A model generated the notes under the pieces. That model did no database searches. It worked only from the letters and a program-made list of their open reading frames with translations, and was not told where the DNA came from. Positions 20,654-59,340 of a stretch of DNA of 64,000 nucleotides are shown one piece after another. Location of the stretch: positions 186,001 through 250,000 of the IMG/VR virus record IMGVR_UViG_3300036715_003906; one strand, 5' to 3'. Made by a program: the position numbers and the translations under genes. Numbering within the stretch: the first letter of the stretch is position 1; the number at the start of each line of letters is the position of its first letter.

Positions 20654-20693
20654 GAGTGACCTCGTACTCCCGGACGCTCCATCGAAAGGTTCG

Positions 20694-20764
20694 TGGACCT
20701 GGGGGGAATCGAACCCCCATCATCGGCTTGCAAAGCCGTGATTCTCCCGTTGAACTACAGGCCC
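20694..20764 (-). tRNA. tRNA-Ala(UGC)
   Basis: G3.U70; loop TT TGC AA. Confidence 0.9.
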
Positions 20765-20891
20765 AGAGGGGGCCCAAGGCGACGTGCCAGGGGCCCGGAT
20801 GATCACTAAGGCCGTTATGCGTGTCGTCGCGCCTGCCTTCAGGGACACGTTGGTGAACCGGGGTGAATGCTCATGACCACCCTGTACACCG

Positions 20892-20963
20892 TGGACCGGC
20901 CGGGACTCGAACCCGGACATCTGCCGTGCGAAAGCAGCGTGCTCCCTTTGGCACTACCGGCCC
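20892..20963 (-). tRNA. tRNA-Ala(CGC)
   Basis: G3.U70; CTGCT-TT CGC AC-GGCAG. Confidence 0.88.
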
Positions 20964-20979
20964 TTGCTGACCCGTAAGC

Positions 20980-21052
20980 GGTGGAGCCGGCGGGGATCGA
21001 ACCCGCCCGCGGCCGGGACAGGGTGCCCTTCTGCCGCCCACCATGAAGCCCC
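20980..21052 (-). ncRNA. Stand-alone tmRNA-TLD-like RNA (Ala acceptor; no D stem, anticodon or tag ORF)
   Basis: GGGGCT...GCGGG TTCGATC CCCGC CGGCTCC ACC; GCGGC/GCCGC helix. Confidence 0.6.
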
Positions 21053-21056
21053 AGGC

Positions 21057-21114
21057 GGTCCCCGGTTTCGGAATCGAACCGATTGCCATGGCGACCCTCC
21101 CTGGGCCGGGGACC
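21057..21114 (-). ncRNA. Miniature tRNA-like RNA lacking an anticodon loop
   Basis: GGTCCCCGG/CCGGGGACC; TCGG TTCGATT CCGA; stub GCC AT GGC. Confidence 0.5.
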
Positions 21115-21300
21115 TGGACTCACCCCTACCCGGCCGGGTGGGGGGCTCGCCTGTCGACGTCAGGGACTCGAACCCCTCGCGCCCCCGGGTAGAGAGCGCG
21201 CCTTCCTGGAAGTCGATGAGCCCGGGTTCTCGGCTGCCCCCCAGGGCCTGGGGCTCGAAGCGTCACCCCGCCCGTACCGGCGCGGGGGGCCGAAAGATTT

Positions 21301-21347
21301 GCAACGACAAAGGGAGTTTGAGTGTAGTCCGCGATCGGATTCACTGT
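21301..21347 (-). ncRNA. Minimal Y-RNA-like gene
   Basis: CAGTGAAT..CGGACTACAC..CTTTGTCGTTG. Confidence 0.55.
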
Positions 21348-21350
21348 CCG

Positions 21351-21422
21351 CGCTTCCGCCGGGAGTTGGACCCAGTACATCCGGTTTAGGAAACCAGCGC
21401 CCGCGGCCGGCGGGACGGAAGC
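21351..21422 (-). tRNA. tRNA-Arg(CCU), atypical T and D loops
   Basis: GCTTCCG/CGGAAGC; CTGGT-TT CCT AA-ACCGG; T loop TCCAACT. Confidence 0.7.
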
Positions 21423-21423
21423 A

Positions 21424-21663
21424 TCAGGGCCCGAAGGCCCCGGGGAAGAGGATGCACAAGAGGCCCGAGAAGTAGAGCCCGAGCCCGAGGGCGACCCCCA
21501 GCATGATGACGTTGGTGGCCTGCTCGCTCTCGGCGACCTGGGACTCCCAGGCCGCACGCTCCTCGGGGGTGGCCCGCTCCCACCACGTCCGGTGGAGGCG
21601 CTGGTGCTTCGGGTCCGCCTCACGCTGCCTACGGGCCCTGCTCGACCACCCATCCATGACCAT
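21424..21663 (-). CDS. Small membrane protein
   Basis: C-terminal hydrophobic helix. Confidence 0.55.
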   Translation of the reverse strand: MVMDGWSSRARRQREADPKHQRLHRTWWERATPEERAAWESQVAESEQATNVIMLGVALGLGLYFSGLLCILFPGAFGP

Positions 21664-21675
21664 GAGCCCTTTCAG

Positions 21676-21759
21676 CGGAAGCAGGAGGAGTCGGACCTCT
21701 CCCCCGGAGGGGTCAATCGGGTAGCGACCGACGGGCCCGCCACCGGGCCTTCAGCTTCC
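21676..21759 (-). tRNA. tRNA-Ser(GCU), atypical
   Basis: GGAAGCT/TGCTTCC G73; GTCGG-TC GCT AC-CCGAT; long variable arm. Confidence 0.68.
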
Positions 21760-21767
21760 AAGCGTCG

Positions 21768-21850
21768 CGGAGCGCGGAGGAGTCGAACCCCTGTCACAAG
21801 GGACCCCCGGTTTTCGAGACCGGTGTCCCGCCGCCGGGACGTCACGCTCC
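21768..21850 (-). tRNA. tRNA-Ser(CGA)
   Basis: CCGGT-CT CGA AA-ACCGG; long variable arm; G73. Confidence 0.85.
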
Positions 21851-22030
21851 AGATTCCCGTCGATTGAAGGTGCGAATCCGGTGGCAGTTGGCACACACCA
21901 GCGCACGCTTCGCGATCTCCGCGAGAAGGGTCTCCCGCGACTTGGCCTGGCCCAGCATCCAGGACACGTTGCCCACCTTGTCACCGTGACAAGGGTCGAA
22001 ACTACCTGCTTCGCAGGCAGTAAGCAAGTT
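21842..22030 (-). pseudogene. HNH endonuclease C-terminal remnant
   Basis: FDP.HGDK.GNVS.M...EIAK.ALVCANCHRIRT without an N-terminus. Confidence 0.6.
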
Positions 22031-22039
22031 TCGTAGTCG

Positions 22040-22112
22040 CGCTGTAGGTGGGAATCGAACCCACACAAACTGGTTTCGTAGACCAGTGCCCTGTCCGTTA
22101 GGCGACCACAGC
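22040..22112 (-). tRNA. tRNA-Arg(ACG)
   Basis: CTGGT-CT ACG AA-ACCAG. Confidence 0.9.
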
Positions 22113-22203
22113 AAAACGTCGGGGCTCTTGCAGACCACGAGAGGAGGCTCGGCCCCCTTTGGGCCTCTCTTCCCTCCGGGTGCCTTCCGCAAGTGTACCC
22201 CCG

Positions 22204-22275
22204 TCAGGGTGGCCGGGATCGAACCGGCCGCATCCTGCATCCAAAGCAGGCGCCCCTCCCTGGGGCTTCACCCTG
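22204..22275 (-). tRNA. tRNA-Pro(UGG)
   Basis: CAGGGTG/CACCCTG A73; CCTGC-TT TGG AT-GCAGG. Confidence 0.88.
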
Positions 22276-22573
22276 GTTGTCGAACCAGATCGATCCGGCC
22301 CTGGGGCGTCGCCACCCCCTGCCGCACCTCCGCCACCTCCTCCGCCGTCCACCCCGGACGGCGGACCCGCAGCGAGGCGGGTGTTCACCGCCACGATGCC
22401 GATCCGGGGGACCTCGTTGCCGACCCTGGACCCGATCGGACGGGCCAAGGGGTTGTCCGCGGGGAAGGGCTGCTCCTTGCGAAGCAGCGCCTGCTCCCGG
22501 ACGGTCTGGAGGAGCTGGAAGATGCAGGTGTACTGGGCCATCGTGACCCAGGTGTAGCATGACGATTTTTCTG

Positions 22574-22644
22574 TGTGACGCCTGGGGGTCGAACCCAGCT
22601 CCACTGATTCACAGACAGTCCCCGTCCCGGACGGGTAGCGCCAC
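22574..22644 (-). tRNA. tRNA-His(GUG), A73 and no encoded G-1
   Basis: GTGGCGC/GCGTCAC A; loop CT GTG AA. Confidence 0.82.
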
Positions 22645-22647
22645 AGA

Positions 22648-22781
22648 GGCAACGACAAAGAGTGCCGAGACGTTTTCGTGTGCTGCCCTTACACCACCCC
22701 GGGACACTGGACCCGGGGCCTGGACTCGAACCAGGTCCACGACCTTCGATTGGTGTAATCCCAGCGAGGTCATTCGTTGCC
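22648..22781 (-). ncRNA. yrlA: YrlA-type Y RNA (circularly permuted tRNA-like domain)
   Basis: GGCAACGAAT...TTTGTCGTTGCC; order T arm (CCTGG TTCGAGT CCAGG), loop-closed acceptor (CCCCGGG/CCCGGGG), D arm (GTGT AAGGGCA GCAC). Confidence 0.88.
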
Positions 22782-22782
22782 G

Positions 22783-22854
22783 TCAGCCTGGCGAGAATCG
22801 AACTCGCTGCCTCTTCGTCCCCAACGAAGCGCGCTACCGATGCGCTACAGGCTG
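22783..22854 (-). tRNA. tRNA-Pro(GGG)
   Basis: CAGCCTG/CAGGCTG; CTTCG-TT GGG GA-CGAAG. Confidence 0.92.
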
Positions 22855-22875
22855 TAGGACCCCTTGCGGGGCCTG

Positions 22876-22960
22876 CGGAAGAGGGAGGACTCGAACCCCC
22901 GTCCCTTGCGGGACTCATCTCGTTTCCAACGAGCGCCCCGGCCTCCGGGGTTCCTCTTCC
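22876..22960 (-). tRNA. tRNA-Ser(GGA)
   Basis: GGAAGAG/CTCTTCC G73; loop TT GGA AA; GTCCC GCAA GGGAC arm. Confidence 0.88.
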
Positions 22961-23017
22961 ATTGTTGGTGGGACCGGCGCAAGGCCGACCTCGTTCCCCG
23001 GACAAACCGGCACCCTG

Positions 23018-23091
23018 TGCTCACGGTGGGAGTCGAACCCACAAATCCCCGGGTTTGAGTCGGGTGCCTATGCCGGTTCGGCTACGAGAGC
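23018..23091 (-). tRNA. tRNA-Leu(CAA), short variable loop
   Basis: Leu-type D arm; loop CT CAA AC; A73. Confidence 0.8.
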
Positions 23092-23092
23092 A

Positions 23093-23180
23093 TGGTGCAG
23101 TCGGGGGGACTCGAACCCCCATGGCCACAAGGGCCGCCAGTCTCTCAAACTGGTGCGTCTACCGTCTTCGCCACGACTGC
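23093..23180 (-). tRNA. tRNA-Leu(GAG)
   Basis: CCAGT-TT GAG AG-ACTGG; long arm; encoded CCA. Confidence 0.92.
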
Positions 23181-23237
23181 ATGAAGACCGACCGGACGTG
23201 AAGGGTGCGTCTGCCAAGTCCTCCCCACCTCCGGTCG

Positions 23238-23324
23238 TGGTGCGAACGGGGGGCCTCGAACCCCCACGCCCTCAAGGAGCGCCACGTTCTGAGCGTGGTG
23301 CGTCTACCGTTCCGCCACGTTCGC
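23238..23324 (-). tRNA. tRNA-Leu(CAG)
   Basis: CCACG-CT CAG AA-CGTGG; long arm; encoded CCA. Confidence 0.92.
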
Positions 23325-23387
23325 ATTCGGTCCTTGAAGGTTCTGCCCAGGGCCGTGAGGCAAACAGGGGCAGGCCCAAGGGCCCGG

Positions 23388-23460
23388 TCGGATCGGAGGG
23401 GATCGAACCCTCCCGCACCTGTCTGTCAAACAGGGGGCCCCACCAGGGACCGGCGATCCG
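23388..23460 (-). tRNA. tRNA-Val(GAC)
   Basis: CGGATCG/CGATCCG; CCTGT-TT GAC AG-ACAGG. Confidence 0.82.
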
Positions 23461-23608
23461 TTGAGTGCTTCGAGCAGGCCCTCGGGGCTTAGAGGCCCTT
23501 GGCCACGCCAGGGGAGCGACCCCCAGCCCGACACCCATCCTCCCGGCCCATCAGAGGTTCATGACGCCTCCCGAGCTAGGTCTACGAGCGCCGTACCCTC
23601 ACGCACAG

Positions 23609-23690
23609 TCGGGGTAGCAGGAATCGAACCTGCTGTTGGCTTTCGCCTCTTGGTCCCGAACCAAGCGCCATCCCAATAGGCGATACCCCG
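23609..23690 (-). tRNA. tRNA-Pro(CGG) with long variable arm
   Basis: CGGGGTA/TACCCCG; CTTGG-TT CGG GA-CCAAG; GGC GAAA GCC extra arm. Confidence 0.85.
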
Positions 23691-23830
23691 ATGATGCCTC
23701 CCCGTGGGCCAGGTGCGGGAGGCGGCCACCGTCAACGGCACCCTCGCGGGTGTAGCCCCTCGTACCAGGTCTAGTCCCCCAGCTCGTTGCGGCGGGGGTC
23801 CCTGGCCGAGATTGTCCCCTGCGGGACCCG

Positions 23831-23901
23831 TCGGACTCGTGGGGATCGAACCCACCTGACCTGCGTGTGGGGCAGGCGCCCTCCCAGAAGGCGAGAGTCC
23901 G
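23831..23901 (-). tRNA. tRNA-Val(CAC)
   Basis: CGGACTC/GAGTCCG; CCTGC-CC CAC AC-GCAGG. Confidence 0.82.
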
Positions 23902-23902
23902 G

Positions 23903-23982
23903 TGTAGCGAGTGGGGATCGAACCCACCCCGGCAAAGCCAGCGGTTTTACAGACCACCTGTGCCACCAGGCACCTTCGCTAC
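23903..23982 (-). tRNA. tRNA-Tyr(GUA)
   Basis: GTAGCGA/TCGCTAC; loop CT GTA AA; long variable arm. Confidence 0.85.
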
Positions 23983-24014
23983 GTAGCGCCGACCCCCTCG
24001 CGGAGATCGACTCG

Positions 24015-24086
24015 TGGTACGGGTGGGAGTCGAACCCACCCGATCCGTGTATCAGACGGAGCCCCCCAACCAGGGAGAACAGTACC
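24015..24086 (-). tRNA. tRNA-Ile(GAU)
   Basis: TCCGT-CT GAT AC-ACGGA. Confidence 0.82.
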
Positions 24087-24092
24087 GTGTTG

Positions 24093-24256
24093 CGACGACA
24101 AGGGGCGTAGAAGATCGATAGGGATAAGCCCGACCCTCTCCAGGGTTGGAACACGGCAGGGCGGAGCCCCGCCATCCGCCCCCGACCCGAAGGGCAGGTC
24201 GCGGGCAGGTGGCGCGGGGTCTACTACCATTACCATCCTGCACTCCGTGCATTCGT
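24093..24256 (-). ncRNA. Y-RNA-like gene with large multi-hairpin cargo
   Basis: ACGAATGC...CCCTTGTCGT; GTAGTAGA/TCTTCTAC stem; three internal hairpins. Confidence 0.55.
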
Positions 24257-24330
24257 GGGGCCCCTGGGAATCGAACCCAGACCTTCCCGTCTTCAGCGGG
24301 ACGCTTACGTACCAAGTCAGCTTGGACCCC
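24256..24330 (-). tRNA. tRNA-Phe(GAA)
   Basis: GGGGTCC/GGGCCCC; TCCCG-CT GAA GA-CGGGA. Confidence 0.85.
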
Positions 24331-24335
24331 GAACA

Positions 24336-24396
24336 GACCGACAACCCTGTCGCAAGTGGGCTTTTGGTTGGATGTACACCAGCGACGCATTCAGCC
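24336..24396 (-). ncRNA. Minimal Y-RNA-like gene (A/C-rich loop cargo)
   Basis: GGCTGAATGC GTCGCTGGTG TACA...CACTTGCGAC AGG GTTGTCGGTC. Confidence 0.65.
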
Positions 24397-24471
24397 TGGC
24401 GCTCCCAGGGGGTATCGATCCCCCTTCCCTACGCTGAGAACGTAGTATCCTAGCCACTAGACGATGGGAGC
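24397..24471 (-). tRNA. tRNA-Glu(CUC)
   Basis: CTACG-TT CTC AG-CGTAG; T loop ATCGATA; encoded CCA. Confidence 0.88.
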
Positions 24472-24483
24472 ATGAAGAAAACG

Positions 24484-24610
24484 GCGACAAGGAAGCTGCC
24501 GAGACTTTTTTGGCGTCCTACCCTTAGACGATCCCCAGCTTGCGCCGGAGAGGAGGAATCGAACCCCCATTTCCACATGGGCAATGGAGTCCCTGCAAGG
24601 CATTCACCGC
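24484..24610 (-). ncRNA. yrlA: YrlA-type Y RNA (circularly permuted tRNA-like domain)
   Basis: GCGGTGAATG...CTTGTCGC; T arm GGGGG TTCGATT CCTCC, acceptor TCTCCGGC GCAA GCTGGGGA, D arm GTCT AAGGGTA GGAC. Confidence 0.88.
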
Positions 24611-24682
24611 TGGCACCCCGTGTGGGAATCGAACCCGACCCCGGATTTCAATCCAGTGCTCTACCGATTGAGCTACCCCGGC
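24611..24682 (-). pseudogene. tRNA-Phe(GAA)-like with unpaired acceptor stem
   Basis: Canonical D arm and TTGAAA loop, but GCCGGGG cannot pair with ACGGGGT. Confidence 0.6.
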
Positions 24683-24740
24683 GTCGCCACACTGCATCGC
24701 GTTCACCCCCGCGCAGGGGAAGGGCCTGTGGCAAGCCCCT

Positions 24741-24816
24741 TGGAGCTGGTCGTGGGAGTCGAACCCACCTGATCCGCGTTACGAGTGCGGTGCCCTCCCA
24801 CGAGGACGAGACCAGC
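24741..24816 (-). tRNA. tRNA-Thr(CGU)
   Basis: GCTGGTC/GACCAGC; loop CT CGT AA; encoded CCA. Confidence 0.88.
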
Positions 24817-25119
24817 AGAAGCGACAGGGGGTCGTACTCCCCCCCGTCCAAGACACCCGTGATCCAAACGGGCACCTCTTTCTCCCCGCCACCGCCCCCT
24901 TACAAGGGCGTCCGGGGTCAAGAGCACGGTCAGGGCGTCGAACCCCCAGTGTTCCCCAGGGGGCTGGAACCCCCCGGCACCTTGCGCCTCGCCTCGGGGC
25001 CCTACGACGACCGGGATCCCAGTCCCTGCCGCCAGTACCCTCCGTCGCCGCCACTGCACATAGTGGACCGAGGGCGAACCCCCAGCCCTAGCTCCGGCCC
25101 TCACGGTCCGGAACCGTCG

Positions 25120-25191
25120 CGACTCGCCTGGGAATCGAACCCAGCCTTCACCGGTTAACAGCCTGCCGCCCCACCTTGAGGCCAACGAGTC
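25120..25191 (-). tRNA. tRNA-Asn(GUU)
   Basis: GACTCGT/GCGAGTC G73; loop CT GTT AA. Confidence 0.8.
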
Positions 25192-25246
25192 AAACCCCGG
25201 GATCTTCACTCCGTTTTCAGGAGTGAGAGGACGACCCGGGTACAGG

Positions 25247-25318
25247 TTCCAAGGGCAGGAATCGAACCTGCCTGTGCTGCGCATGAAAACTAGCACACCC
25301 CGCCTCGGGGTCCCTGGA
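25247..25318 (-). ncRNA. tRNA-like RNA with enlarged 13-nt anticodon loop (isotype undetermined)
   Basis: TCCAGGG/CCTTGGA; GTGCT-AGTTTTCATGCGC-AGCAC; GCAGG TTCGATT CCTGC. Confidence 0.55.
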
Positions 25319-25520
25319 ATGGCCCGGCCGATTGCCTCACGGCAGCGTCCGGGCTGTCTTTTCTTAGACGATCAGGAGAGGTCCACTCTACGACGCAGGC
25401 CCGACCGCTGGAGCCCCCGGGAGGGGTCGGTCACGCTTCGGCTGCTACACCCCTCACAGGGTCCGCTTCGTTTCTCTCATCCTGCCAGATTGTCAAGGAT
25501 CAGGCCCCTTGCGGGACCAG

Positions 25521-25588
25521 CACCGGTGGAAGGACTCGAACCCTCGTGACGACGGTCAGAGCGTCGCTGCCCGCCTTGGGGCACCGGA
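25521..25588 (-). tRNA. tRNA-Gln(CUG), short D arm, U1:U72
   Basis: CGACG-CT CTG AC-CGTCG; GAGGG TTCGAGT CCTTC. Confidence 0.75.
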
Positions 25589-25596
25589 ATACGGAG

Positions 25597-25667
25597 TGGA
25601 ACCAGAGGGGATCGAACCCTCTCCTGACCGTTAAGAGCGGCCTGCTCTACCCTCGAGCTAGGGTTCC
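25597..25667 (-). tRNA. tRNA-Lys(CUU)
   Basis: GGCCG-CT CTT AA-CGGTC. Confidence 0.9.
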
Positions 25668-54234: not shown

Positions 54235-55944
54235 ATGGCCGTCCGTCCCCTCTGCCAGGTCAAGGACGGCGGCGGCTCCTTCGTCGCCACCACGGACGGG
54301 GTGAGCGTCACCGCGGGCCAGACCCTCACAATCCGCCTCGCCGACGTGACCGACGTGGTCGCCTGGTTCCTGGTCCTGACCGGGACCGACGAGACCACGT
54401 TCCCCCCGGCCCTTGCCAGCGTCAACCCGTCCACGAACCAGGTCTCCTCCCCCGGCGCCCAGGTCACCTTCACCTTGCCGGGTGGGGCCGGCCGCGCCCT
54501 GATCTTCGAGTCCACCGTGACGGGCCCCGGAGGCCCCCAGGTGACGACCTTCGCGCTCTACGTACCCACGACCCACGGCTACCGGGTCGGGGCCACGGGG
54601 GAGCAACGGGAGGGCAGCACGTCCTATGGGTGGGTCACGAAGCTGAACCCTCTGATCCGCCAGGGGGCCCCCGTCGTCCGCTACGACGACACCATGGCCT
54701 CCCCCACCCTCGGGGCCTCCACGGTACAGGGTGCCCTCGACGCCCTCAAGGCCCTCACCGGCGGCTTCACGGCCGGGGGCGACCTCTCGGGCTCCTCGTC
54801 GAGCCAGACCGTCATCGGTCTCCGCGGCGTACCGCTCGACTCGACGCCTCCCACCGACGGCCAGGTCATCACGTACAGCAGCAGCCTGGGGCGATGGGTC
54901 TACGGGGCCGTCCCCTCGGGCAGCTTCACGGCGGGTGGGGATCTCTCCGGGTCAACCACCAGCCAGACGGTCAACAAGATCAAGAACCTGGCGATCATCG
55001 GGTTCCCCTCGAACGGGCAGGTCCTCACCTACTCGAACACGGGACCGAACCTCTACTGGTCAACCGTGTCGGGCGGAGGCGGGGGGGTCTTCCCCGCGAT
55101 CTTCGGTACGGGGGCGGACGGTTCCGCGACCGTGTCCGGGACCGTCACCTACACCCGCGACATGCACTTCACGGACCTGACCGTCCATGTCGGTGGCAAG
55201 ATCGTCGTGGCCGGGTTCCGTATCTACGTCCAGAACACGCTCACGATCGATGCGGGGGGCATCCTCACGGCGGACGGCGCCGACGGCGTTGGCCGGACCG
55301 GCGGCGGCACCGCGGGCGGCGGTGGCGACTCGACCATGATTCTGGGCGGAGGGGCCGAGGGGGGCGCGGGTGGCACCGCGGGTCAAGGGGATCAGGGCCA
55401 GACCTTCCGCTCTGCCAAATGGGGCGGTGATGGCGGAGCAGGGGGTCAAGGCTACCGCGACCTATGGCCGGGGGGGGCGCCCTCCCCTGACGTGGGGCTG
55501 CCTGTGGGGAACCCTCCCGATCTGGAGGGACTTCTCGGGGGCTTCTGGCGTACCCGTACAGGCGCCGGTCTCCAGTTTTACCCCTGGGACGGGGGCGGTG
55601 CAGGGGGTGGTGGGGGTGGGGGTGCAGCCGGGGACGGAGGCAAGGGTGGCGGGGGTGGGGGTGTGATCGCCCTCATCGCCAAGAACCTCGTCAACAACGG
55701 GGTCATCTCGGCCAACGGCGGCAACGGCGCGGACGCGGACCCCGCCTGGGCAGGTGGCGGCGGGGGCGGCGGGGGCGGGGGCGTCGTCACCCTCTTCGTC
55801 AAGACCTACACGGGCCTCATCGCCCGGGCCTTTGGCGGAGCGGGCGGGCTCAAAGGAAACGGGAGCCCCGAGGGAGGCTCCTCGGGCAACGTGAACGGGA
55901 GCCCCGGGAGCGACGGGAAGGTCTACGTCTTCGAGGCGAGCTGA
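54235..55944 (+). CDS. Glycine-rich tail/fibre protein
   Basis: Repeated AGGDLSG; GQV.TY motifs; GTGADG and ANGG Gly-rich C-terminus. Confidence 0.78.
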   Translation: MAVRPLCQVKDGGGSFVATTDGVSVTAGQTLTIRLADVTDVVAWFLVLTGTDETTFPPALASVNPSTNQVSSPGAQVTFTLPGGAGRALIFESTVTGPGGPQVTTFALYVPTTHGYRVGATGEQREGSTSYGWVTKLNPLIRQGAPVVRYDDTMASPTLGASTVQGALDALKALTGGFTAGGDLSGSSSSQTVIGLRGVPLDSTPPTDGQVITYSSSLGRWVYGAVPSGSFTAGGDLSGSTTSQTVNKIKNLAIIGFPSNGQVLTYSNTGPNLYWSTVSGGGGGVFPAIFGTGADGSATVSGTVTYTRDMHFTDLTVHVGGKIVVAGFRIYVQNTLTIDAGGILTADGADGVGRTGGGTAGGGGDSTMILGGGAEGGAGGTAGQGDQGQTFRSAKWGGDGGAGGQGYRDLWPGGAPSPDVGLPVGNPPDLEGLLGGFWRTRTGAGLQFYPWDGGGAGGGGGGGAAGDGGKGGGGGGVIALIAKNLVNNGVISANGGNGADADPAWAGGGGGGGGGGVVTLFVKTYTGLIARAFGGAGGLKGNGSPEGGSSGNVNGSPGSDGKVYVFEAS

Positions 55945-55963
55945 AGGTACGGACGTCGCGCCC

Positions 55964-56410
55964 TCACCTCGCCCCGAGCTTGTGGAGGCACGCCACGAAG
56001 CCCGGGTTCCCGATCGACCGCCGCTGCCTCCGCCGCTGGACCCTCCGTACCGCGTCTGCCCCCGAGCACCCGGTACGGAGGTGGAGGGCCAGGGCCGACA
56101 CCAGGCCCGAGCGGTTCCGGCCTTGCCCACAGGTCACGAGGACCCGATGCCCTCCCCCCCCCCCCGTTTCTGCTACCCGCCTGGCGGCGCCGAGCGCCAG
56201 GGCCAGCTCCTCCCGGGTAGGGAGGCGCTCGTAGCTGTCGTCGTTGGGGGCGTGGATGACCTGTAGCCCGGGGAACCTCTCGGCCGGCGGCGGGTACTCG
56301 GCCGCGCAAAGGACAAGCACCCGGAAGCCCACGGCATGAAGCCCGGGGCCGGGGTCGGGCCGGCCCAGCCTCCCTGGTGGAGCGTGTGGTAGAGCAGCGT
56401 CGCGTCGATG
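55964..56410 (-). CDS. Dual-specificity phosphatase (frameshifted 5' part)
   Basis: VLVTCGQGRNRS (CX5R). Confidence 0.75.
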   Translation of the reverse strand, partial: HRRDAALPHAPPGRLGRPDPGPGLHAVGFRVLVLCAAEYPPPAERFPGLQVIHAPNDDSYERLPTREELALALGAARRVAETGGGGGHRVLVTCGQGRNRSGLVSALALHLRTGCSGADAVRRVQRRRQRRSIGNPGFVACLHKLGAR

Positions 56411-56612
56411 GCTGCCAGGGTAAAGCGCCCTGGGGGACGGCCCCTCTCGGGTTCGTCCTACGGACCGGCCGCAGGGCCATGGTCTTCGGGGGCGTTCGGT
56501 CGGGGGCGGAGACCGCTCGGTAGAGCGTGTCGCTGAGGTCCGCCAGCTCCCGAGACGTCTGCTCCAGGGCTGCGTGGGCGGCTTGCTCTTCAGGGGTCAT
56601 TGCTTCCTTGCC

Positions 56613-57194
56613 TCACTTGCGGGGGTCTTTGGAGTCGATGTACCCCAGCGCGGCCATGACGCCCCGCAAAAGGCTGTTCGACTCGGCCATTTGACGCTGG
56701 AGCTTGTTCAGCTCGTCCGCTCGGGCACGGGAGTCCCGCTCGTACTCCTCGCGGGAGACGAGGTCCGAGTTGTCCTGGATGGCCGCCTCGATCTTGGCCT
56801 GGCGATTACGGACCGCCCCCAGGGACTCATTCATGCGTTCTTCAATGGCCAGTAGTTCCCCGAGGCCCGTCACCGACGTCGGCCGGCCACGGGCAATACG
56901 GAGCATCCAGGGCGGCGGGTCCTCGGCCCAGCCATCGAGCATGGTCCGTGTTGCCCGGACCTGCTCTCGGATCTGGTAGACCGTCAAGAAGAGGCCCGTC
57001 CGCGGCGCACCGGTCCGCATGTCCTCGTCCTCCCCGACCTTGTCCTCCAGCGCCTTGATCTTGCCCTTGATATCCCGCCAGCCGCCGAGCATGGTGGTGG
57101 CCGCGGCCCCACTCCCCGTCAGGAGGGCGGTGACGATGTTCTCCGTCAACGACTTCGCGTCCATGTTCTCCGTGGCCTCCCCCTTGACGTCCAT
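56613..57194 (-). CDS. Coiled-coil protein with N-terminal hydrophobic helix
   Basis: IVTALLTGSGAAA segment; coiled-coil C-terminus. Confidence 0.6.
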   Translation of the reverse strand: MDVKGEATENMDAKSLTENIVTALLTGSGAAATTMLGGWRDIKGKIKALEDKVGEDEDMRTGAPRTGLFLTVYQIREQVRATRTMLDGWAEDPPPWMLRIARGRPTSVTGLGELLAIEERMNESLGAVRNRQAKIEAAIQDNSDLVSREEYERDSRARADELNKLQRQMAESNSLLRGVMAALGYIDSKDPRK

Positions 57195-57364
57195 GCAGAA
57201 GGAAAAACGGAGCCGCCACACGGACACACTCCTCCGTGGCAAAGAGCCCCCGCACCGGGTAAATAAGGCCCCGGAAACGCCGAAGGCCCCCGAGGCTTGG
57301 GGAGCCAGGGGGGCCTTCGGGAAGGGGTGGGGCCAGCGGGAAGGGGTGGGGCCAGCGGGACTAG

Positions 57365-57625
57365 TTGATCATGTAGACCTTGCGCGCCTTCCTCCCCGAG
57401 GGACGACAAGAGGTGCAACGTCCGGGTGGCCCCTCGAAAGGGGCCGGGCCGCGGAGTCAGACTTTCTCGTCTTTGGGGCGATAGAATCGCAGGGGTTGGA
57501 TGATCGTGTAGACCTAGCGGGCATCCACCGGGGACGCATTCCCGGGCAGCAAGGTGATTGCTGAGTCAGCTCTCCCCGACGTACCAGAGGCCGCCGGTCT
57601 GACTCAGAGCAGGTCGCCGACCGCG
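57365..57625 (-). ncRNA. Tandem Y-RNA-like units directly downstream of ro60
   Basis: Repeated CTGACTC, CTTG, GGAA(T/G) and AGGTCTACAYGATCA motifs, matching the array Y RNAs. Confidence 0.6.
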
Positions 57626-59340
57626 TTTTCGATCATGGCGGTCCAGGACGTCTCCATCCCGGCCTGGAAGGTCGCCGCCACCTCGAAGACCGTGTCGCTG
57701 AACCCCCCCATGTTCAGGATGTCGTCCCGGCTCGGGGCCTGGGTCGTCGTGTTCGGCGACAAGTCCATGCAGATGAGCTTGGCCTTGGGGTTGCGCACCT
57801 TGACCTTGTCCCACTCGCTCATGGTCGTCGTCTTGCCCCCCGACCGGCTCGCGAAGTAGCTGGCATAGGCCGCGGCCCGCGCCGAGTCCACCCACGACTC
57901 GTTGTCCGAGACGTACCAGACGAGATCCGGCGTGAAGCCCATGCTGTTGATCGTCGCCATCGGGGCCGAGCAGTTCGTCCCCCCGCCCGGGACCTCCTTG
58001 AGCTTCTGGGCGTTCGTCATGATCGAGTCCCGCGGGTTGAACGTGTACCCGACCCGGCTGACCTCGGCGAAGGGCAGGACCATCGCCTCCGGGTTCTTCC
58101 GCAGGATGGACGCCGCCACGAGGGCCGCCACGTCCAGGCACGAAACCTTGGTCGTGTGCGTCTCGACCTTGCCCGTCTTCGGGTTCACCCGCGTCCCCGT
58201 CACCGGCGACGACATGGAGCCCGACACGTCCGGGAAGACCGCGACCTTCCCGTTGATCACCGGGATGTTGTCCGTCGAGATCTCGACCGCGTCCTGGAGG
58301 GCGTTACGGATCGCCTGGGGCACGTCCGTCGCGTTCAGGTACGTGACCAGGAGCTGGTACGGCATGACCCGCGCCTTCTTGATCAGCTCCTTGTCCCCGA
58401 GCTTGTCCGCGATCTTCCGCACCGCCGCGTCGCTCTTGAAGACGCCCTTCTTCTGAAACACGTTCAAGTGCTGCCGGATCTGCTGCCAGGAGGACCCGTT
58501 GGTCGCCAGCTCGATCCACTGGTCCGGCGTGAGCGCCAGGCCCTCCAGCATCTCGAAGGGGGCCTTCGGGAGCGGCTTGCCCTCCGGGCTTGCCCGGAAC
58601 GCCTCGTACTGCTGCACGACTTCGGGGCACACGTCGAGAACCGAGATCTCGCGGCCCCCGAACTTCGCCTTCTCCTTGCCGAGCAGGTAGCCGTAGAGCG
58701 CCGCCGCCTGGGCCGTCTGCGGCGACGGGTGCGCCAGCGACAGGATATCCCCGAGCGACGGGTCATTGCCCACGGACGCGAAGAACAGCCCCTCCGCCGT
58801 CCGGGACGCCATCCACGACGCCACCAGCCGCCTCGGGGCCGACCCGAGCGACGTTCGACCCGCCTGCCCGGACCGGACCACCTGCACGAAGTTCCGCACC
58901 ATCTTCCCGTTGTCGCAGACCTGGGGGAAGGCCGCCGTCAGTAGCCGCGACAGCTTCGTGACCTCGGCGTTGTGCGCCCGGGCCTCGGCCTTCTTGCCCG
59001 CCTTGTGCGCCGCCTCCTCGGCCTTCGCCTCCCGCGCCAGCTCCCCGGCCAGGTGCCCGAGCAAGTAGGCCGGCATGTCCTTCATGAACCCCCGCGTGCG
59101 GCTGTAAACTGCCACCTGGGCCACGAACTCCGGCGGGACCTCGTTCACCAGCTTCTTCACCTGGTCGAGCTGCGCCTGCGCGCTCGCGTAGTAGGTGTGG
59201 TTGAAGCAGCCCGTGGCAGCGATCTGCGCCAGGGCCTCCTTCGAGGAGAGCGCGTATGCCTTTCCCCCCGCCTGGTTCGTCACCCGTCCCGTGCTCACGC
59301 CCGCGCCCTTGTTCGCCCCGAACAACGTCTTCGATGCCAT
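57604..59340 (-). CDS. rsr: Ro60/Rsr (TROVE + vWA) RNA-binding protein
   Basis: NQAGG.AY, TGCFN.TYY, GFMKDMP, MVRNFVQ, PDVSGSM, GGGTNCS, VSDNESW, GGFSD.VF. Confidence 0.95.
   Translation of the reverse strand: MASKTLFGANKGAGVSTGRVTNQAGGKAYALSSKEALAQIAATGCFNHTYYASAQAQLDQVKKLVNEVPPEFVAQVAVYSRTRGFMKDMPAYLLGHLAGELAREAKAEEAAHKAGKKAEARAHNAEVTKLSRLLTAAFPQVCDNGKMVRNFVQVVRSGQAGRTSLGSAPRRLVASWMASRTAEGLFFASVGNDPSLGDILSLAHPSPQTAQAAALYGYLLGKEKAKFGGREISVLDVCPEVVQQYEAFRASPEGKPLPKAPFEMLEGLALTPDQWIELATNGSSWQQIRQHLNVFQKKGVFKSDAAVRKIADKLGDKELIKKARVMPYQLLVTYLNATDVPQAIRNALQDAVEISTDNIPVINGKVAVFPDVSGSMSSPVTGTRVNPKTGKVETHTTKVSCLDVAALVAASILRKNPEAMVLPFAEVSRVGYTFNPRDSIMTNAQKLKEVPGGGTNCSAPMATINSMGFTPDLVWYVSDNESWVDSARAAAYASYFASRSGGKTTTMSEWDKVKVRNPKAKLICMDLSPNTTTQAPSRDDILNMGGFSDTVFEVAATFQAGMETSWTAMIENAVGDLL

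What the first reader, a model, noticed from the sequence alone, without database searches (positions are those of the whole stretch)
57365..57625. Tandem Y-like units behind ro60, the first overlapping its stop codon
Seen: CTGAGTCAG (containing the ro60 TGA) pairs perfectly with CTGACTCAG ~30 nt downstream and is followed by CTTGCTGC. Two further copies of GGAA...AGGTCTACAYGATCA and a second GACTC...CTTGTCG follow. They fold either as head-to-tail Y RNAs or as circular permutations with the terminal helix capped by a loop. A 19-nt tandem duplication (TCCCGCTGGCCCCACCCCT) and a GC hairpin lie downstream. Inference: a Ro60 site in its own mRNA 3' end (autoregulation) and/or permuted Y RNAs.
Basis: partly seen in the sequence, partly recalled or inferred. 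Interest (0 to 1): 0.7.

Follow-up and report, generated by a model that had tools for sequence, protein, structure and literature searches.

The report
Permuted Y-RNA modules behind phage ro60
The 340 bases after a giant phage's Ro60 gene encode two small structured RNAs that carry the Ro60-binding core of bacterial Y RNAs with its strands joined in the opposite order, a new variant of a known RNA-protein partnership.

Summary
The window is part of a 251-kb phage record. Its ro60 gene (57604-59340, minus strand) is followed by a 9-bp hairpin whose 5' arm contains the TGA stop. After that come two related 57-67-nt units, a 19-nt tandem duplication, a GC hairpin and a terminator-like site.

The units are not chance repeats. 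The same unit recurs 1-4 times after ro60 in seven related phage contigs. A covariance model built from those relatives finds both window units and nothing else significant in the 251-kb record. It finds nothing in 775 kb of control phage DNA.

The conserved pieces are AUGCC, GGUC-UACA, GACU and ACCCCUUG. These are the two strands of the basal, Ro60/Rsr-binding stem of bacterial Y RNAs (Rfam YrlA, RF02553). In more distant Ro60 loci the same pieces flank a tRNA-like domain and pass Rfam's cut-off.

In this clade the order is inverted. The stem that is terminal in every described Y RNA is capped by a short loop, and there is no tRNA-like domain.

So these are Y-RNA-like Ro60 partner modules in circularly permuted form: a new variant of a known kind. 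Ro60 binding, RNA ends and autoregulation could not be tested.

The parts
57604..59340 (-). ro60 (rsr) gene, 578 aa
   Evidence: Pfam vWA_Ro60 1.9e-13. PHROG 850 RNA-binding protein 1.8e-29. D. radiodurans Rsr 2NVO 5.7e-14 and phage phiLo Ro60 9L5Y. 7529 homologues at E<=1e-30.
57561..57607 (-). Stop-codon hairpin. The 5' arm CUGAGUCAG (57607-57599) holds the UGA. The 3' arm CUGACUCAG (57569-57561) is also the first strand (P2b) of unit 1.
   Evidence: (I18): 9/9 complementary. Ensemble probability 0.92 in the full 3' region. The equivalent pairing AGUCA:UGACU is kept in L131 and L133, with compensatory outer pairs. GUCAG lies within 30 nt after the stop in 8 of 9 clade loci.
57504..57570 (-). 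Unit 1, permuted Y module. P2b GACUCAGC 57567-57560; J1 AAUCACCUUG 57559-57550; capped P1 hairpin 57549-57525; J2 AUGCC 57524-57520; P2a GCUAGGUC 57518-57511; UACA 57510-57507.
   Evidence: Model R1, built without window sequences: 30.3 bits, E 3.6e-5 in 0.52 Mb and 1.7e-5 in the whole record. Coordinates. P1 arms pair 5/5 by position.
57464..57503 (-). Linker: small hairpin GCGAU-UCU-AUCGC (57490-57478) and the invariant AAAGACGAGAA (57474-57464).
   Evidence: AAAGACGAGAA is identical in the window, L131 and L133, while the surrounding linker differs. GACGAG can pair with CUUGUC of unit 2.
57426..57463 (-). 5' extension of unit 2: GUCUGACUCCGCGG (57462-57449) and an inserted GC hairpin (57445-57428).
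   Evidence: Colinear with L131, where AAGUCCGCA pairs with UGCGGACUU. GUCUGACUC is also 9/9 complementary to GAGUCAGAC at the stop codon (I17).
57369..57425 (-). Unit 2, permuted Y module. P2b GACGUUGC 57422-57415; J1 ACCUCUUGU 57414-57406; capped P1 hairpin 57405-57391; J2 AAGGCGC 57390-57384 (deviant); P2a GCAAGGUC 57383-57376; UACA 57375-57372.
   Evidence: R1: 27.1 bits, E 2.6e-4. RNAalifold of window/L131/L133 predicts exactly this fold, with 3 compensatory pairs in P2 and 1 in P1. The single-sequence MFE closes P2 correctly. A strain variant reads UGAAUGCUCGC in J2, which is the consensus.
57323..57360 (-). 19-nt tandem duplication (2 full copies plus a partial third down to 57310).
   Evidence: (D3). 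One copy is absent in a ~93% identical strain from run X5, so it is recent and probably not essential. It contains ACCCCUU, which aligns with the J1-like AACCCUU of relatives.
57261..57320 (-). GC hairpin (57320-57280) overlapping a terminator-like stem and T-tract (57296-57261).
   Evidence: (I1). It is the only terminator-like site on this strand in 56500-60300. Equivalent hairpins end the arrays of L131, L132 and L133.
56613..57242 (-). Next gene downstream (unknown function), bounding the non-coding stretch.
   Evidence: 62% identical to the gene after the array in L131. The match starts at residue 28, so the true start is probably later. No Pfam or PHROG hit.

Best explanation
The ~340-nt stretch after the phage's ro60 gene encodes two Y-RNA-like modules. 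They are most likely co-transcribed with ro60 and end at the hairpin/T-tract at 57296-57261.

Each module carries the conserved core of the basal stem of bacterial Y RNAs (YrlA/YrlB), the part held to bind Ro60/Rsr. That core is helix P1, an internal loop made of AUGCC on one strand and ACCCCUUG on the other, and helix P2 ending in GGUC:GACU followed by UACA.

The connectivity is circularly permuted. The order is P2b, J1, P1 hairpin, J2, P2a, UACA. P1 is therefore closed by a 3-9-nt loop, and the free ends lie on the side where canonical Y RNAs carry their effector loop or tRNA-like domain.

Shown by computation:
- the motifs, their order and their conservation;
- their strand-specific link to ro60;
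- covariation in P1 and P2.

Inferred:
- the phage Ro60 binds P1/J2;
- the modules are cut out of the ro60 transcript, after which P2 closes;
- the RNP acts on host RNA decay or RNA quality control, as shown for Thermus phage phiLo Ro60-Yrl with PNPase.

The stop-codon hairpin, and the GACGAG and anti-P2b segments, compete with P2 in the unprocessed transcript.
For: 1. Ro60 identity.

2. Conservation. The same unit follows ro60 in L131, L132, L133, L134, L136, L216 and L389, where Ro60 is 53-70% identical. The 3' regions of the window, L131 and L133 are colinear, and the flanking gene is syntenic.

3. Specificity.
- R1, built from 7 non-window units, gives 61 hits at E<=1 in ~1.0 Mb of Ro60 loci, and all 61 lie on the ro60 strand.
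- It gives 0 hits in 775 kb of control phage contigs that contain the exact 15-mer.
- In the 251-kb record, only the two units match below E 0.01.

4. Homology to Y RNAs.
- The Rfam YrlA consensus is P1, AUGC, P2a, CUAC ... P2b, AcUuG, P1'.
- In L143, L170, L147, L191 and L151 the same motifs flank a tRNA-like domain and pass Rfam's cut-off.
- Three of those YrlA matches overlap R1 hits.
- The motif corresponds to GNCGAAN0-1G and YUAY of Chen et al. 2014 (PMC4201824).

5. Permuted fold.
- 16 units: P2 95.5% paired with 4 of 7 pairs compensatory; P1 has 4 of 5 pairs compensatory; 0/500 shuffles reach the observed covariation score; all slid controls are lower.
- Positional P1 pairing is 97% within units against 70% across units.
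- The MFE of isolated units gives the same architecture in 10 of 13.
- The A-U to U-A swap in the P2 core (GACU:GGUC to GUCU:GGAC) matches within units, not between neighbours, in L136 and L389.

6. G-U pairs in the helices fix the transcribed strand as that of ro60.
Against: - No transcript data exist: none was listed. RNA ends, processing and even expression are therefore unknown.
- Ro60 binding is untested.
- Both window units score well below their relatives (30 and 27 bits against 45-69). Unit 2 has a deviant J2 (AAGGC instead of AAUGC). Neither unit has the full CGAA of the published motif.
- In full-length folds, the P2b strands are sequestered by upstream complementary segments: the stop hairpin has p=0.92, and GACGAG pairs with CUUGUC. 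RNAalifold gives the stop hairpin, not P2, for unit 1.
- P2 is so conserved that within-unit and cross-unit pairing differ little (88% against 81%).
- In the window and L131, the neighbour reading of P1 is possible through G-U-rich pairs (5/5).
- The covariation alignment was fitted to the model.
Confidence: 0.7

Rival explanations
1. Ordinary head-to-tail Y RNAs. The functional RNAs run from J2/P2a of one repeat to P2b/J1 of the next, with P1 formed between the 3' arm of one hairpin and the 5' arm of the next, as in the canonical tandem YrlA/YrlB arrays of bacteria.
For: - Canonical tandem arrays are the rule in more distant Ro60 loci, and R1 hits there simply bridge unit junctions.
- In the window and L131, the neighbour P1 arms can pair 5/5 by position, although 3 of the 5 pairs are G-U. 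Neighbour P2 pairs 6/8.
- In L132 the neighbour P2 is 8/8.
- The first unit of L132, L136, L216 and L389 is canonical.
Against: - Neighbour P1 pairing is only 2-3/5 in L133, L136, L216 and L389, while within-unit pairing is 5/5.
- P1 is closed by tetraloops such as UUCC, UUCG and GUCC.
- The first half-unit has no upstream J2/P2a partner, because the ORF lies there. The last has no downstream P2b partner.
- Rfam YrlA finds nothing here.
Confidence: 0.12
2. A cis-acting 3' UTR device rather than separate small RNAs. Ro60 binds the modules on its own mRNA. The stop-codon hairpin couples translation termination to the fold of unit 1, giving feedback on ro60 expression or co-translational RNP assembly.
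For: - The UGA lies in the 5' arm of a 9-bp hairpin that sequesters P2b of unit 1.
- The equivalent pairing, and GUCAG right after the stop, recur in L131 and L133. GUCAG lies within 30 nt of the stop in 8 of 9 clade loci.
- No promoter-like site separates ro60 from the units.
Against: - Nothing tests binding or regulation.
- In L132, L136, L216 and L389 the GUCAG sits in a hairpin loop 15-25 nt past the stop, so overlap with the stop codon is not a conserved feature.
- Known bacterial Y RNAs are cut from polycistronic precursors (PMC4201824), which explains the layout without feedback.
- This explanation does not exclude the best one.
Confidence: 0.2
3. Decaying or non-functional repeats: remnants of duplicated Y genes, or DNA-level repeats such as protein-binding sites, with no present RNA function in this phage.
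For: - Window units score lower than relatives.
- Unit 2 has lost the AAUGC consensus that a sister strain keeps.
- The nearby 19-nt duplication is strain-specific.
- J1-like vestiges follow the last unit.
Against: - Both units keep P1 and P2 pairing.
- The arrangement is held across contigs whose Ro60 is only 53-70% identical.
- Compensatory changes and G-U pairs argue for selection at the RNA level and on one strand.
- A sister strain differs at 11 positions, yet retains both units.
Confidence: 0.05

Closest known systems
YrlB-type bacterial Y RNAs (Salmonella Typhimurium YrlB, Mycobacterium smegmatis YrlB, D. radiodurans Yrn2; Chen et al. 2014, PMC4201824)
   Same: Small Ro60/Rsr-linked RNAs without a full tRNA-like domain. 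They are encoded next to rsr on the same strand, occur in multiples and are cut from a common precursor. They share the CGAAUG-type motif at the P1/internal-loop junction.
   Different: YrlB is a long hairpin whose 5' and 3' ends form the basal stem. Here the basal stem is capped by a loop and the ends lie at P2. No binding or expression data exist here.
YrlA (Rfam RF02553)
   Same: The basal module is the same: P1, AUGC, P2a, CUAC ... P2b, ACUUG, P1'. Position and strand relative to ro60 also match. In the same phage clade, the first unit of some arrays (L136, L389) is canonical and keeps a T-arm.
   Different: There is no T, acceptor-like or D arms. The strand order is inverted. There is no Rfam match in the region even at E<=10, and none above noise in the 251-kb record.
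Thermus phage phiLo Ro60 with Yrl1/Yrl2 (Hu et al. 2025, PMC12135203)
   Same: A phage-encoded Ro60 with two Y-like RNAs next to the gene. It gives a functional precedent: the RNP binds host PNPase and attenuates it.
   Different: The phiLo Yrls lie upstream of the gene, were defined by a CGAA motif in a bulge of an end-paired stem, and were tested by EMSA and cryo-EM. The window's units lie downstream, are permuted and are untested.
Circularly permuted tRNA genes; YrlA as a 'permuted tRNA' (Wang et al. 2018, bioRxiv 10.1101/312249)
   Same: The same idea: an RNA module whose helices are kept while the position of the chain ends moves.
   Different: In that literature the permutation concerns the tRNA-like domain relative to tRNA. 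Here it is the Ro60-binding stem itself that is permuted relative to all described Y RNAs.

Membership tests
Bacterial Y RNA (YrlA/YrlB class, Chen et al. 2014) | Encoded within about 4 kb of ro60/rsr, on the same strand | tested here: met
   The units start 34 nt after the stop codon, on the same strand. All 61 R1 hits in Ro60 loci are on the ro60 strand.
Bacterial Y RNA (YrlA/YrlB class, Chen et al. 2014) | GNCGAAN0-1G motif (putative Rsr contact) at the junction of basal stem and internal loop | tested here: inconclusive
   The clade consensus is (U/G)GAAUGCC. Window unit 1 has GGAUGCC and unit 2 has GGAAGGC. A sister strain reads UGAAUGC in unit 2. The AUGC core is kept in unit 1, but the full CGAA is in neither.
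Bacterial Y RNA (YrlA/YrlB class, Chen et al. 2014) | Basal stem formed by pairing the RNA's 5' and 3' ends | tested here: not met
   P1 is a hairpin closed by a 3-9-nt loop, and J1 precedes J2. This is the permutation.
Bacterial Y RNA (YrlA/YrlB class, Chen et al. 2014) | Second-strand motif (ACUUG) and YUAY at the start of the apical part | tested here: met
   J1 is UCACCUUG in unit 1 and ACCUCUUG in unit 2. CUAC lies within GGUCUACA in both units. Compare the Rfam consensus.
Bacterial Y RNA (YrlA/YrlB class, Chen et al. 2014) | Bound by Ro60/Rsr in vivo or in vitro | not testable with these tools
   Complex prediction gives no verdict for RNA. No RNA runs were listed.
YrlA (Rfam RF02553) | tRNA-like domain (T arm, closed acceptor-like stem, D arm) | tested here: not met
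   There is no tRNA-like hit in 57000-57800. Only a 13-nt hairpin lies in the linker.
YrlA (Rfam RF02553) | Score at or above the Rfam gathering cut-off (69 bits) | tested here: not met
   There is no YrlA hit at E<=10 in the region. The best hit in the whole record is 16.6 bits, inside the tRNA cluster.
Metazoan-type Y RNA (Rfam RF00019) | Bulged helix GGUCCGA / UUGACU at the paired termini | tested here: not met
   Only GGUC:GACU is shared. There is no Rfam hit.
Small self-cleaving ribozymes (considered because natural circular permutants are typical of them) | Match to the hammerhead, twister, twister-sister, pistol, hatchet or hairpin cores | tested here: not met
   There is no such Rfam match at E<=10, nor in 18 related loci at gathering score.
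Intrinsic terminator | GC-rich stem followed by a T-tract on the transcribed strand | tested here: met
   Stem at 57296-57268, followed by CTTATTT. This is a consensus scan only.

The most novel reading that the evidence does not exclude
This phage clade has a distinct class of Y RNA. The Ro60-binding stem is circularly permuted, so the free 5' and 3' tails replace the effector loop. The modules are held inactive in the ro60 transcript by competing strands: the stop-codon arm GAGUCAG, and GACGAG. They would be released by the terminating ribosome or by processing, which would couple Ro60 synthesis to assembly of its RNP.
Probability: 0.15. Interest if true: 0.75.

Novelty: new variant of a known kind. 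Interest (0 to 1): 0.5.

Why it matters
Y RNAs are defined by a stem made from their two ends, and Ro60 sits on that stem. A natural clade keeps the conserved loop and both helices but moves the chain ends to the other side. This shows which parts of the module are under selection: P1, the AUGCC/ACCCCUUG loop and GGUC:GACU. It also shows that the end-paired topology is dispensable.

These units are compact 55-65-nt Ro60 ligands for structural work. The finding points to free tails, rather than a loop or a tRNA mimic, as the effector side.

It also explains why covariance-model annotation (Rfam YrlA) misses the Y RNAs of these large phages. These phages also carry tRNA arrays, a tmRNA and, in relatives, RlaP-type RNA-repair genes.

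Tried and rejected
- Rfam on the window at gathering score and on 57000-57800 at E<=10 gave no relevant family.
- Rfam YrlA on the whole phage record gave only noise in the tRNA cluster.
- An exact 15-mer scan of viral contigs gave 117+ unrelated chance matches. These were useful only as a control set.
- A strict three-block pattern in viral contigs gave 0 matches.
- The first Ro60 relatives from viral contigs and Myxococcus phage Mx1 were too distant to align downstream of the gene.
- Seven of 12 contig look-ups returned no DNA.
- No RNA sequencing runs were listed.
- Complex prediction was not folded for protein plus RNA and is not evidence either way.
- The GGUC-UACAY-GAUC mini-hairpin was rejected. 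GAUC is not conserved in a sister strain or in relatives.
- A T-arm reading of the linker hairpin was rejected. It has a 3-nt loop or a non-T-loop sequence and is not conserved in L133.
- A ribozyme reading was rejected.
- My helix-probability script is valid only for the unique 9-mers (stop hairpin). The zeros for short strings are artefacts and are not used.

Full report
**Context**

The window is bases 186001-250000 of a 251-kb IMG/VR virus record that CheckV rates 53% complete. It carries a tmRNA and 33 tRNA genes, so it is a large phage.

The ORF at 57604-59340 on the minus strand is a Ro60/Rsr orthologue:
- Pfam vWA_Ro60, 1.9e-13.
- PHROG 850, 1.8e-29.
- D. radiodurans Rsr 2NVO, 5.7e-14, and the Ro60 of Thermus phage phiLo.

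The nearest cellular Ro60 proteins (44-48% identity) are from Planctomycetota, Acidobacteriota and Verrucomicrobiota assemblies. This is only a hint at the host.

**Check of the observation**

- The TGA (57606-57604) lies inside CTGAGTCAG (57607-57599). That 9-mer is 9/9 complementary to CTGACTCAG (57569-57561), with 29 nt between the arms.
- The 15-mer AGGTCTACAYGATCA occurs twice and nowhere else exactly in the 251-kb record.
- The 19-nt repeat has 2.7 copies.
- A GC hairpin and the only terminator-like site on this strand follow.

**Relatives**

Rfam gave nothing for the region, even at E<=10.

The first Ro60 relatives (38-45% identity) were too distant to compare. A protein search then found a clade with 50-70% identity. 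The contigs that could be fetched all have a 250-700-nt gap after ro60.

In L131, L132, L133, L134, L136, L216 and L389 that gap holds 1-4 copies of one unit. The unit reads:
- a strand GACUC-NGC (P2b);
- ACCCCUUG (J1);
- a variable hairpin (P1);
- AUGCC (J2);
- GCN-GGUC (P2a);
- UACA.

The 3' regions of the window, L131 and L133 align end to end. They share the stop-proximal GUCAG, unit 1, an invariant AAAGACGAGAA, unit 2 with a 5' extension hairpin, and a terminator hairpin. The next gene is 62% identical.

**Specificity**

I built covariance model R1 from seven units of other contigs, with no window sequence.
- It finds window unit 1 (57504-57570, 30.3 bits) and unit 2 (57369-57425, 27.1 bits).
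- In the whole 251-kb record these are the only matches below E 0.01.
- Across about 1.0 Mb of Ro60 loci it gives 61 hits at E<=1, all on the ro60 strand.
- In 775 kb of unrelated phage contigs that contain the exact 15-mer, it gives none.
- In 80 cellular Ro60 loci it gives only three weak junction hits.
- Scores above 45 bits are confined to the phage clade: 11 units in 7 contigs.

**What the unit is**

In more distant Ro60 loci the same short motifs appear in the other order. The order there is P1 strand, (C)GAAUGC, P2a ending in GG(U/A)C, UACA, an apical part, P2b, ACCCUUG, and the second P1 strand.
- In L292 and L295 the apical part is a T arm, a closed acceptor-like stem and a D arm. Rfam YrlA matches L292 at 50 bits.
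- In L143, L170, L147, L191 and L151, YrlA passes Rfam's cut-off. Three of these matches overlap R1 hits through J2, P2a and UACA.
- The Rfam consensus reads P1, AUGC, P2a, CUAC ... P2b, AcUuG, P1'.
- AUGC with the preceding CGA is the GNCGAAN0-1G motif proposed as the Rsr contact. CUAC is the conserved YUAY (PMC4201824).

The window's units therefore carry both strands of the basal, Ro60-binding module of bacterial Y RNAs.

**Topology**

In the window's clade, J1 comes before J2 and the two are joined by the P1 hairpin.
- Taking the five bases after J1 and the five before J2 purely by position, 97% of pairs are standard within units, against 70% when arms are swapped between units.
- P1 sequences differ widely, and loops are 3-9 nt, often tetraloops.
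- On the model-guided alignment of 16 units, P2 is 95.5% paired with 4 of 7 pairs showing double changes. P1 has 4 of 5 such pairs. None of 500 shuffles reaches the observed covariation score, and all slid controls are lower. This alignment was fitted to the model, so it leans towards it.
- Each isolated unit folds by MFE into the same nested architecture in 10 of 13 cases. Unit 2 of the window closes P2 correctly; unit 1 does not.
- RNAalifold on the three colinear 3' regions predicts the permuted fold for unit 2, with three compensatory pairs in P2.
- A swap in the P2 core (GACU:GGUC to GUCU:GGAC) in L136 and L389 matches within units and mismatches between neighbours.

The head-to-tail reading is poor in L133, L136, L216 and L389, where neighbour P1 pairs 2-3/5. 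It remains formally possible in the window and L131 through G-U-rich pairing.

Arrays in L132, L136, L216 and L389 begin with a canonical unit and continue with permuted ones, so both topologies coexist.

**Competing structures**

The first strand of unit 1 is the 3' arm of the stop-codon hairpin, which has probability 0.92 in the full-length ensemble. RNAalifold keeps the corresponding pairing in L131 and L133.

Upstream strands complementary to P2b are significant in 3 of 13 units, with a fourth (L131 unit 2) close to that. GACGAG of the invariant linker can pair with CUUGUC of unit 2.

GUCAG lies within 30 nt after the stop in 8 of 9 clade loci. In four of them it sits in a hairpin loop rather than at the stop.

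Whether these strands hold the modules open in the precursor, or are the working fold, cannot be decided without RNA data.

**Strain variation**

Contigs of run X5 carry a relative about 93% identical across the region.
- It lacks one 19-nt copy.
- It reads UGAAUGCUCGC where the window has the deviant AGGAAGGCGCGC.
- It changes the G of GAUC after UACAC.
- It keeps both units.

The duplication is therefore recent.

**Mechanism**

The most likely account runs as follows.
- ro60 and the modules are one transcript ending at 57296-57261. There is no promoter-like site between them, though the scan covers only sigma-70 types.
- The modules bind the phage Ro60 through P1 and J2.
- Processing frees units whose ends pair as P2.
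- The RNP then acts on host RNA turnover or quality control.

There are precedents. Bacterial Y RNAs are cut from polycistronic precursors and tether Rsr to PNPase (PMC4201824). The phiLo Ro60-Yrl complexes bind and attenuate host PNPase (PMC12135203).

Only the sequence-level steps are shown here. Binding, processing and function are inferred.

**Novelty**

Phage Ro60 genes, neighbouring Y RNAs and tandem Y RNAs are known. In the searched literature, 'circularly permuted' is applied only to the tRNA-like domain of YrlA relative to tRNA. A permuted Ro60-binding stem without a tRNA-like domain was not found in that literature, and Rfam does not detect it.

I file this as a new variant of a known kind, with moderate interest.

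Noticed in passing
window 14302-25667 (-) and 62035-62110 (+): A tmRNA (tag ANDNVALVALAA) followed by an array of 32 tRNA genes, two of them with odd anticodon loops, plus a lone tRNA-Leu near ro60. This is typical of very large phages.
   Followed up: no
window 57598-57606; L131 4720-4730; L133 4683-4692; L132, L136, L216, L389 15-25 nt after the stop: GUCAG lies within 30 nt after the ro60 stop codon in 8 of 9 clade loci, either at the stop or in the loop of a strong hairpin. It is complementary to YUGAC at the start of the permuted units. Its role is unknown.
   Followed up: partly
window 57464-57474: AAAGACGAGAA is invariant between unit 1 and unit 2 in the window, L131 and L133, although the rest of the linker differs. 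It is the most A-rich spot of the region and can pair with CUUGUC of unit 2. It could be a processing site or a competing strand.
   Followed up: partly
window 57323-57360, compared with run X5: A sister strain about 93% identical lacks one copy of the 19-nt repeat and has the consensus AAUGC in unit 2, where the window has AAGGC.
   Followed up: yes
L132 4358-5458, L134 4453-5544, L389 5388-6728; L131 5873-6346, L133 5732-6160: In relatives, an RlaP-family nucleotidyltransferase (PF10127) or a DSPc phosphatase gene lies just after the ro60/Y array. This suggests an RNA-repair or RNA-modification neighbourhood. No such Pfam or PHROG hit was found for the six ORFs beside ro60 that were tested (54235-57242 and 59429-61681).
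   Followed up: no
L254 4500-5430: At least six canonical Y-like units in tandem after ro60 in another large phage contig. They are preceded by a 129-nt tRNA-like match.
   Followed up: no
L136 4270-4400 and L389 4270-4395: The first unit of these arrays is canonical and keeps only a T-arm (GGGUUCGACUCC) of the tRNA-like domain. Permuted units follow in the same array. P1 shows a U-A to C-G compensatory change between the two contigs.
   Followed up: partly
window 56154-56165: A run of 12 C on the plus strand, inside overlapping ORFs between 55462 and 56600. It could be a slippage-prone tract or an assembly artefact.
   Followed up: no
L309-L388: The closest cellular Ro60 proteins (44-48% identity) come from Planctomycetota, Pyrinomonadaceae/Blastocatellia and Verrucomicrobiota assemblies. 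This is a weak hint at the phage's host range.
   Followed up: no
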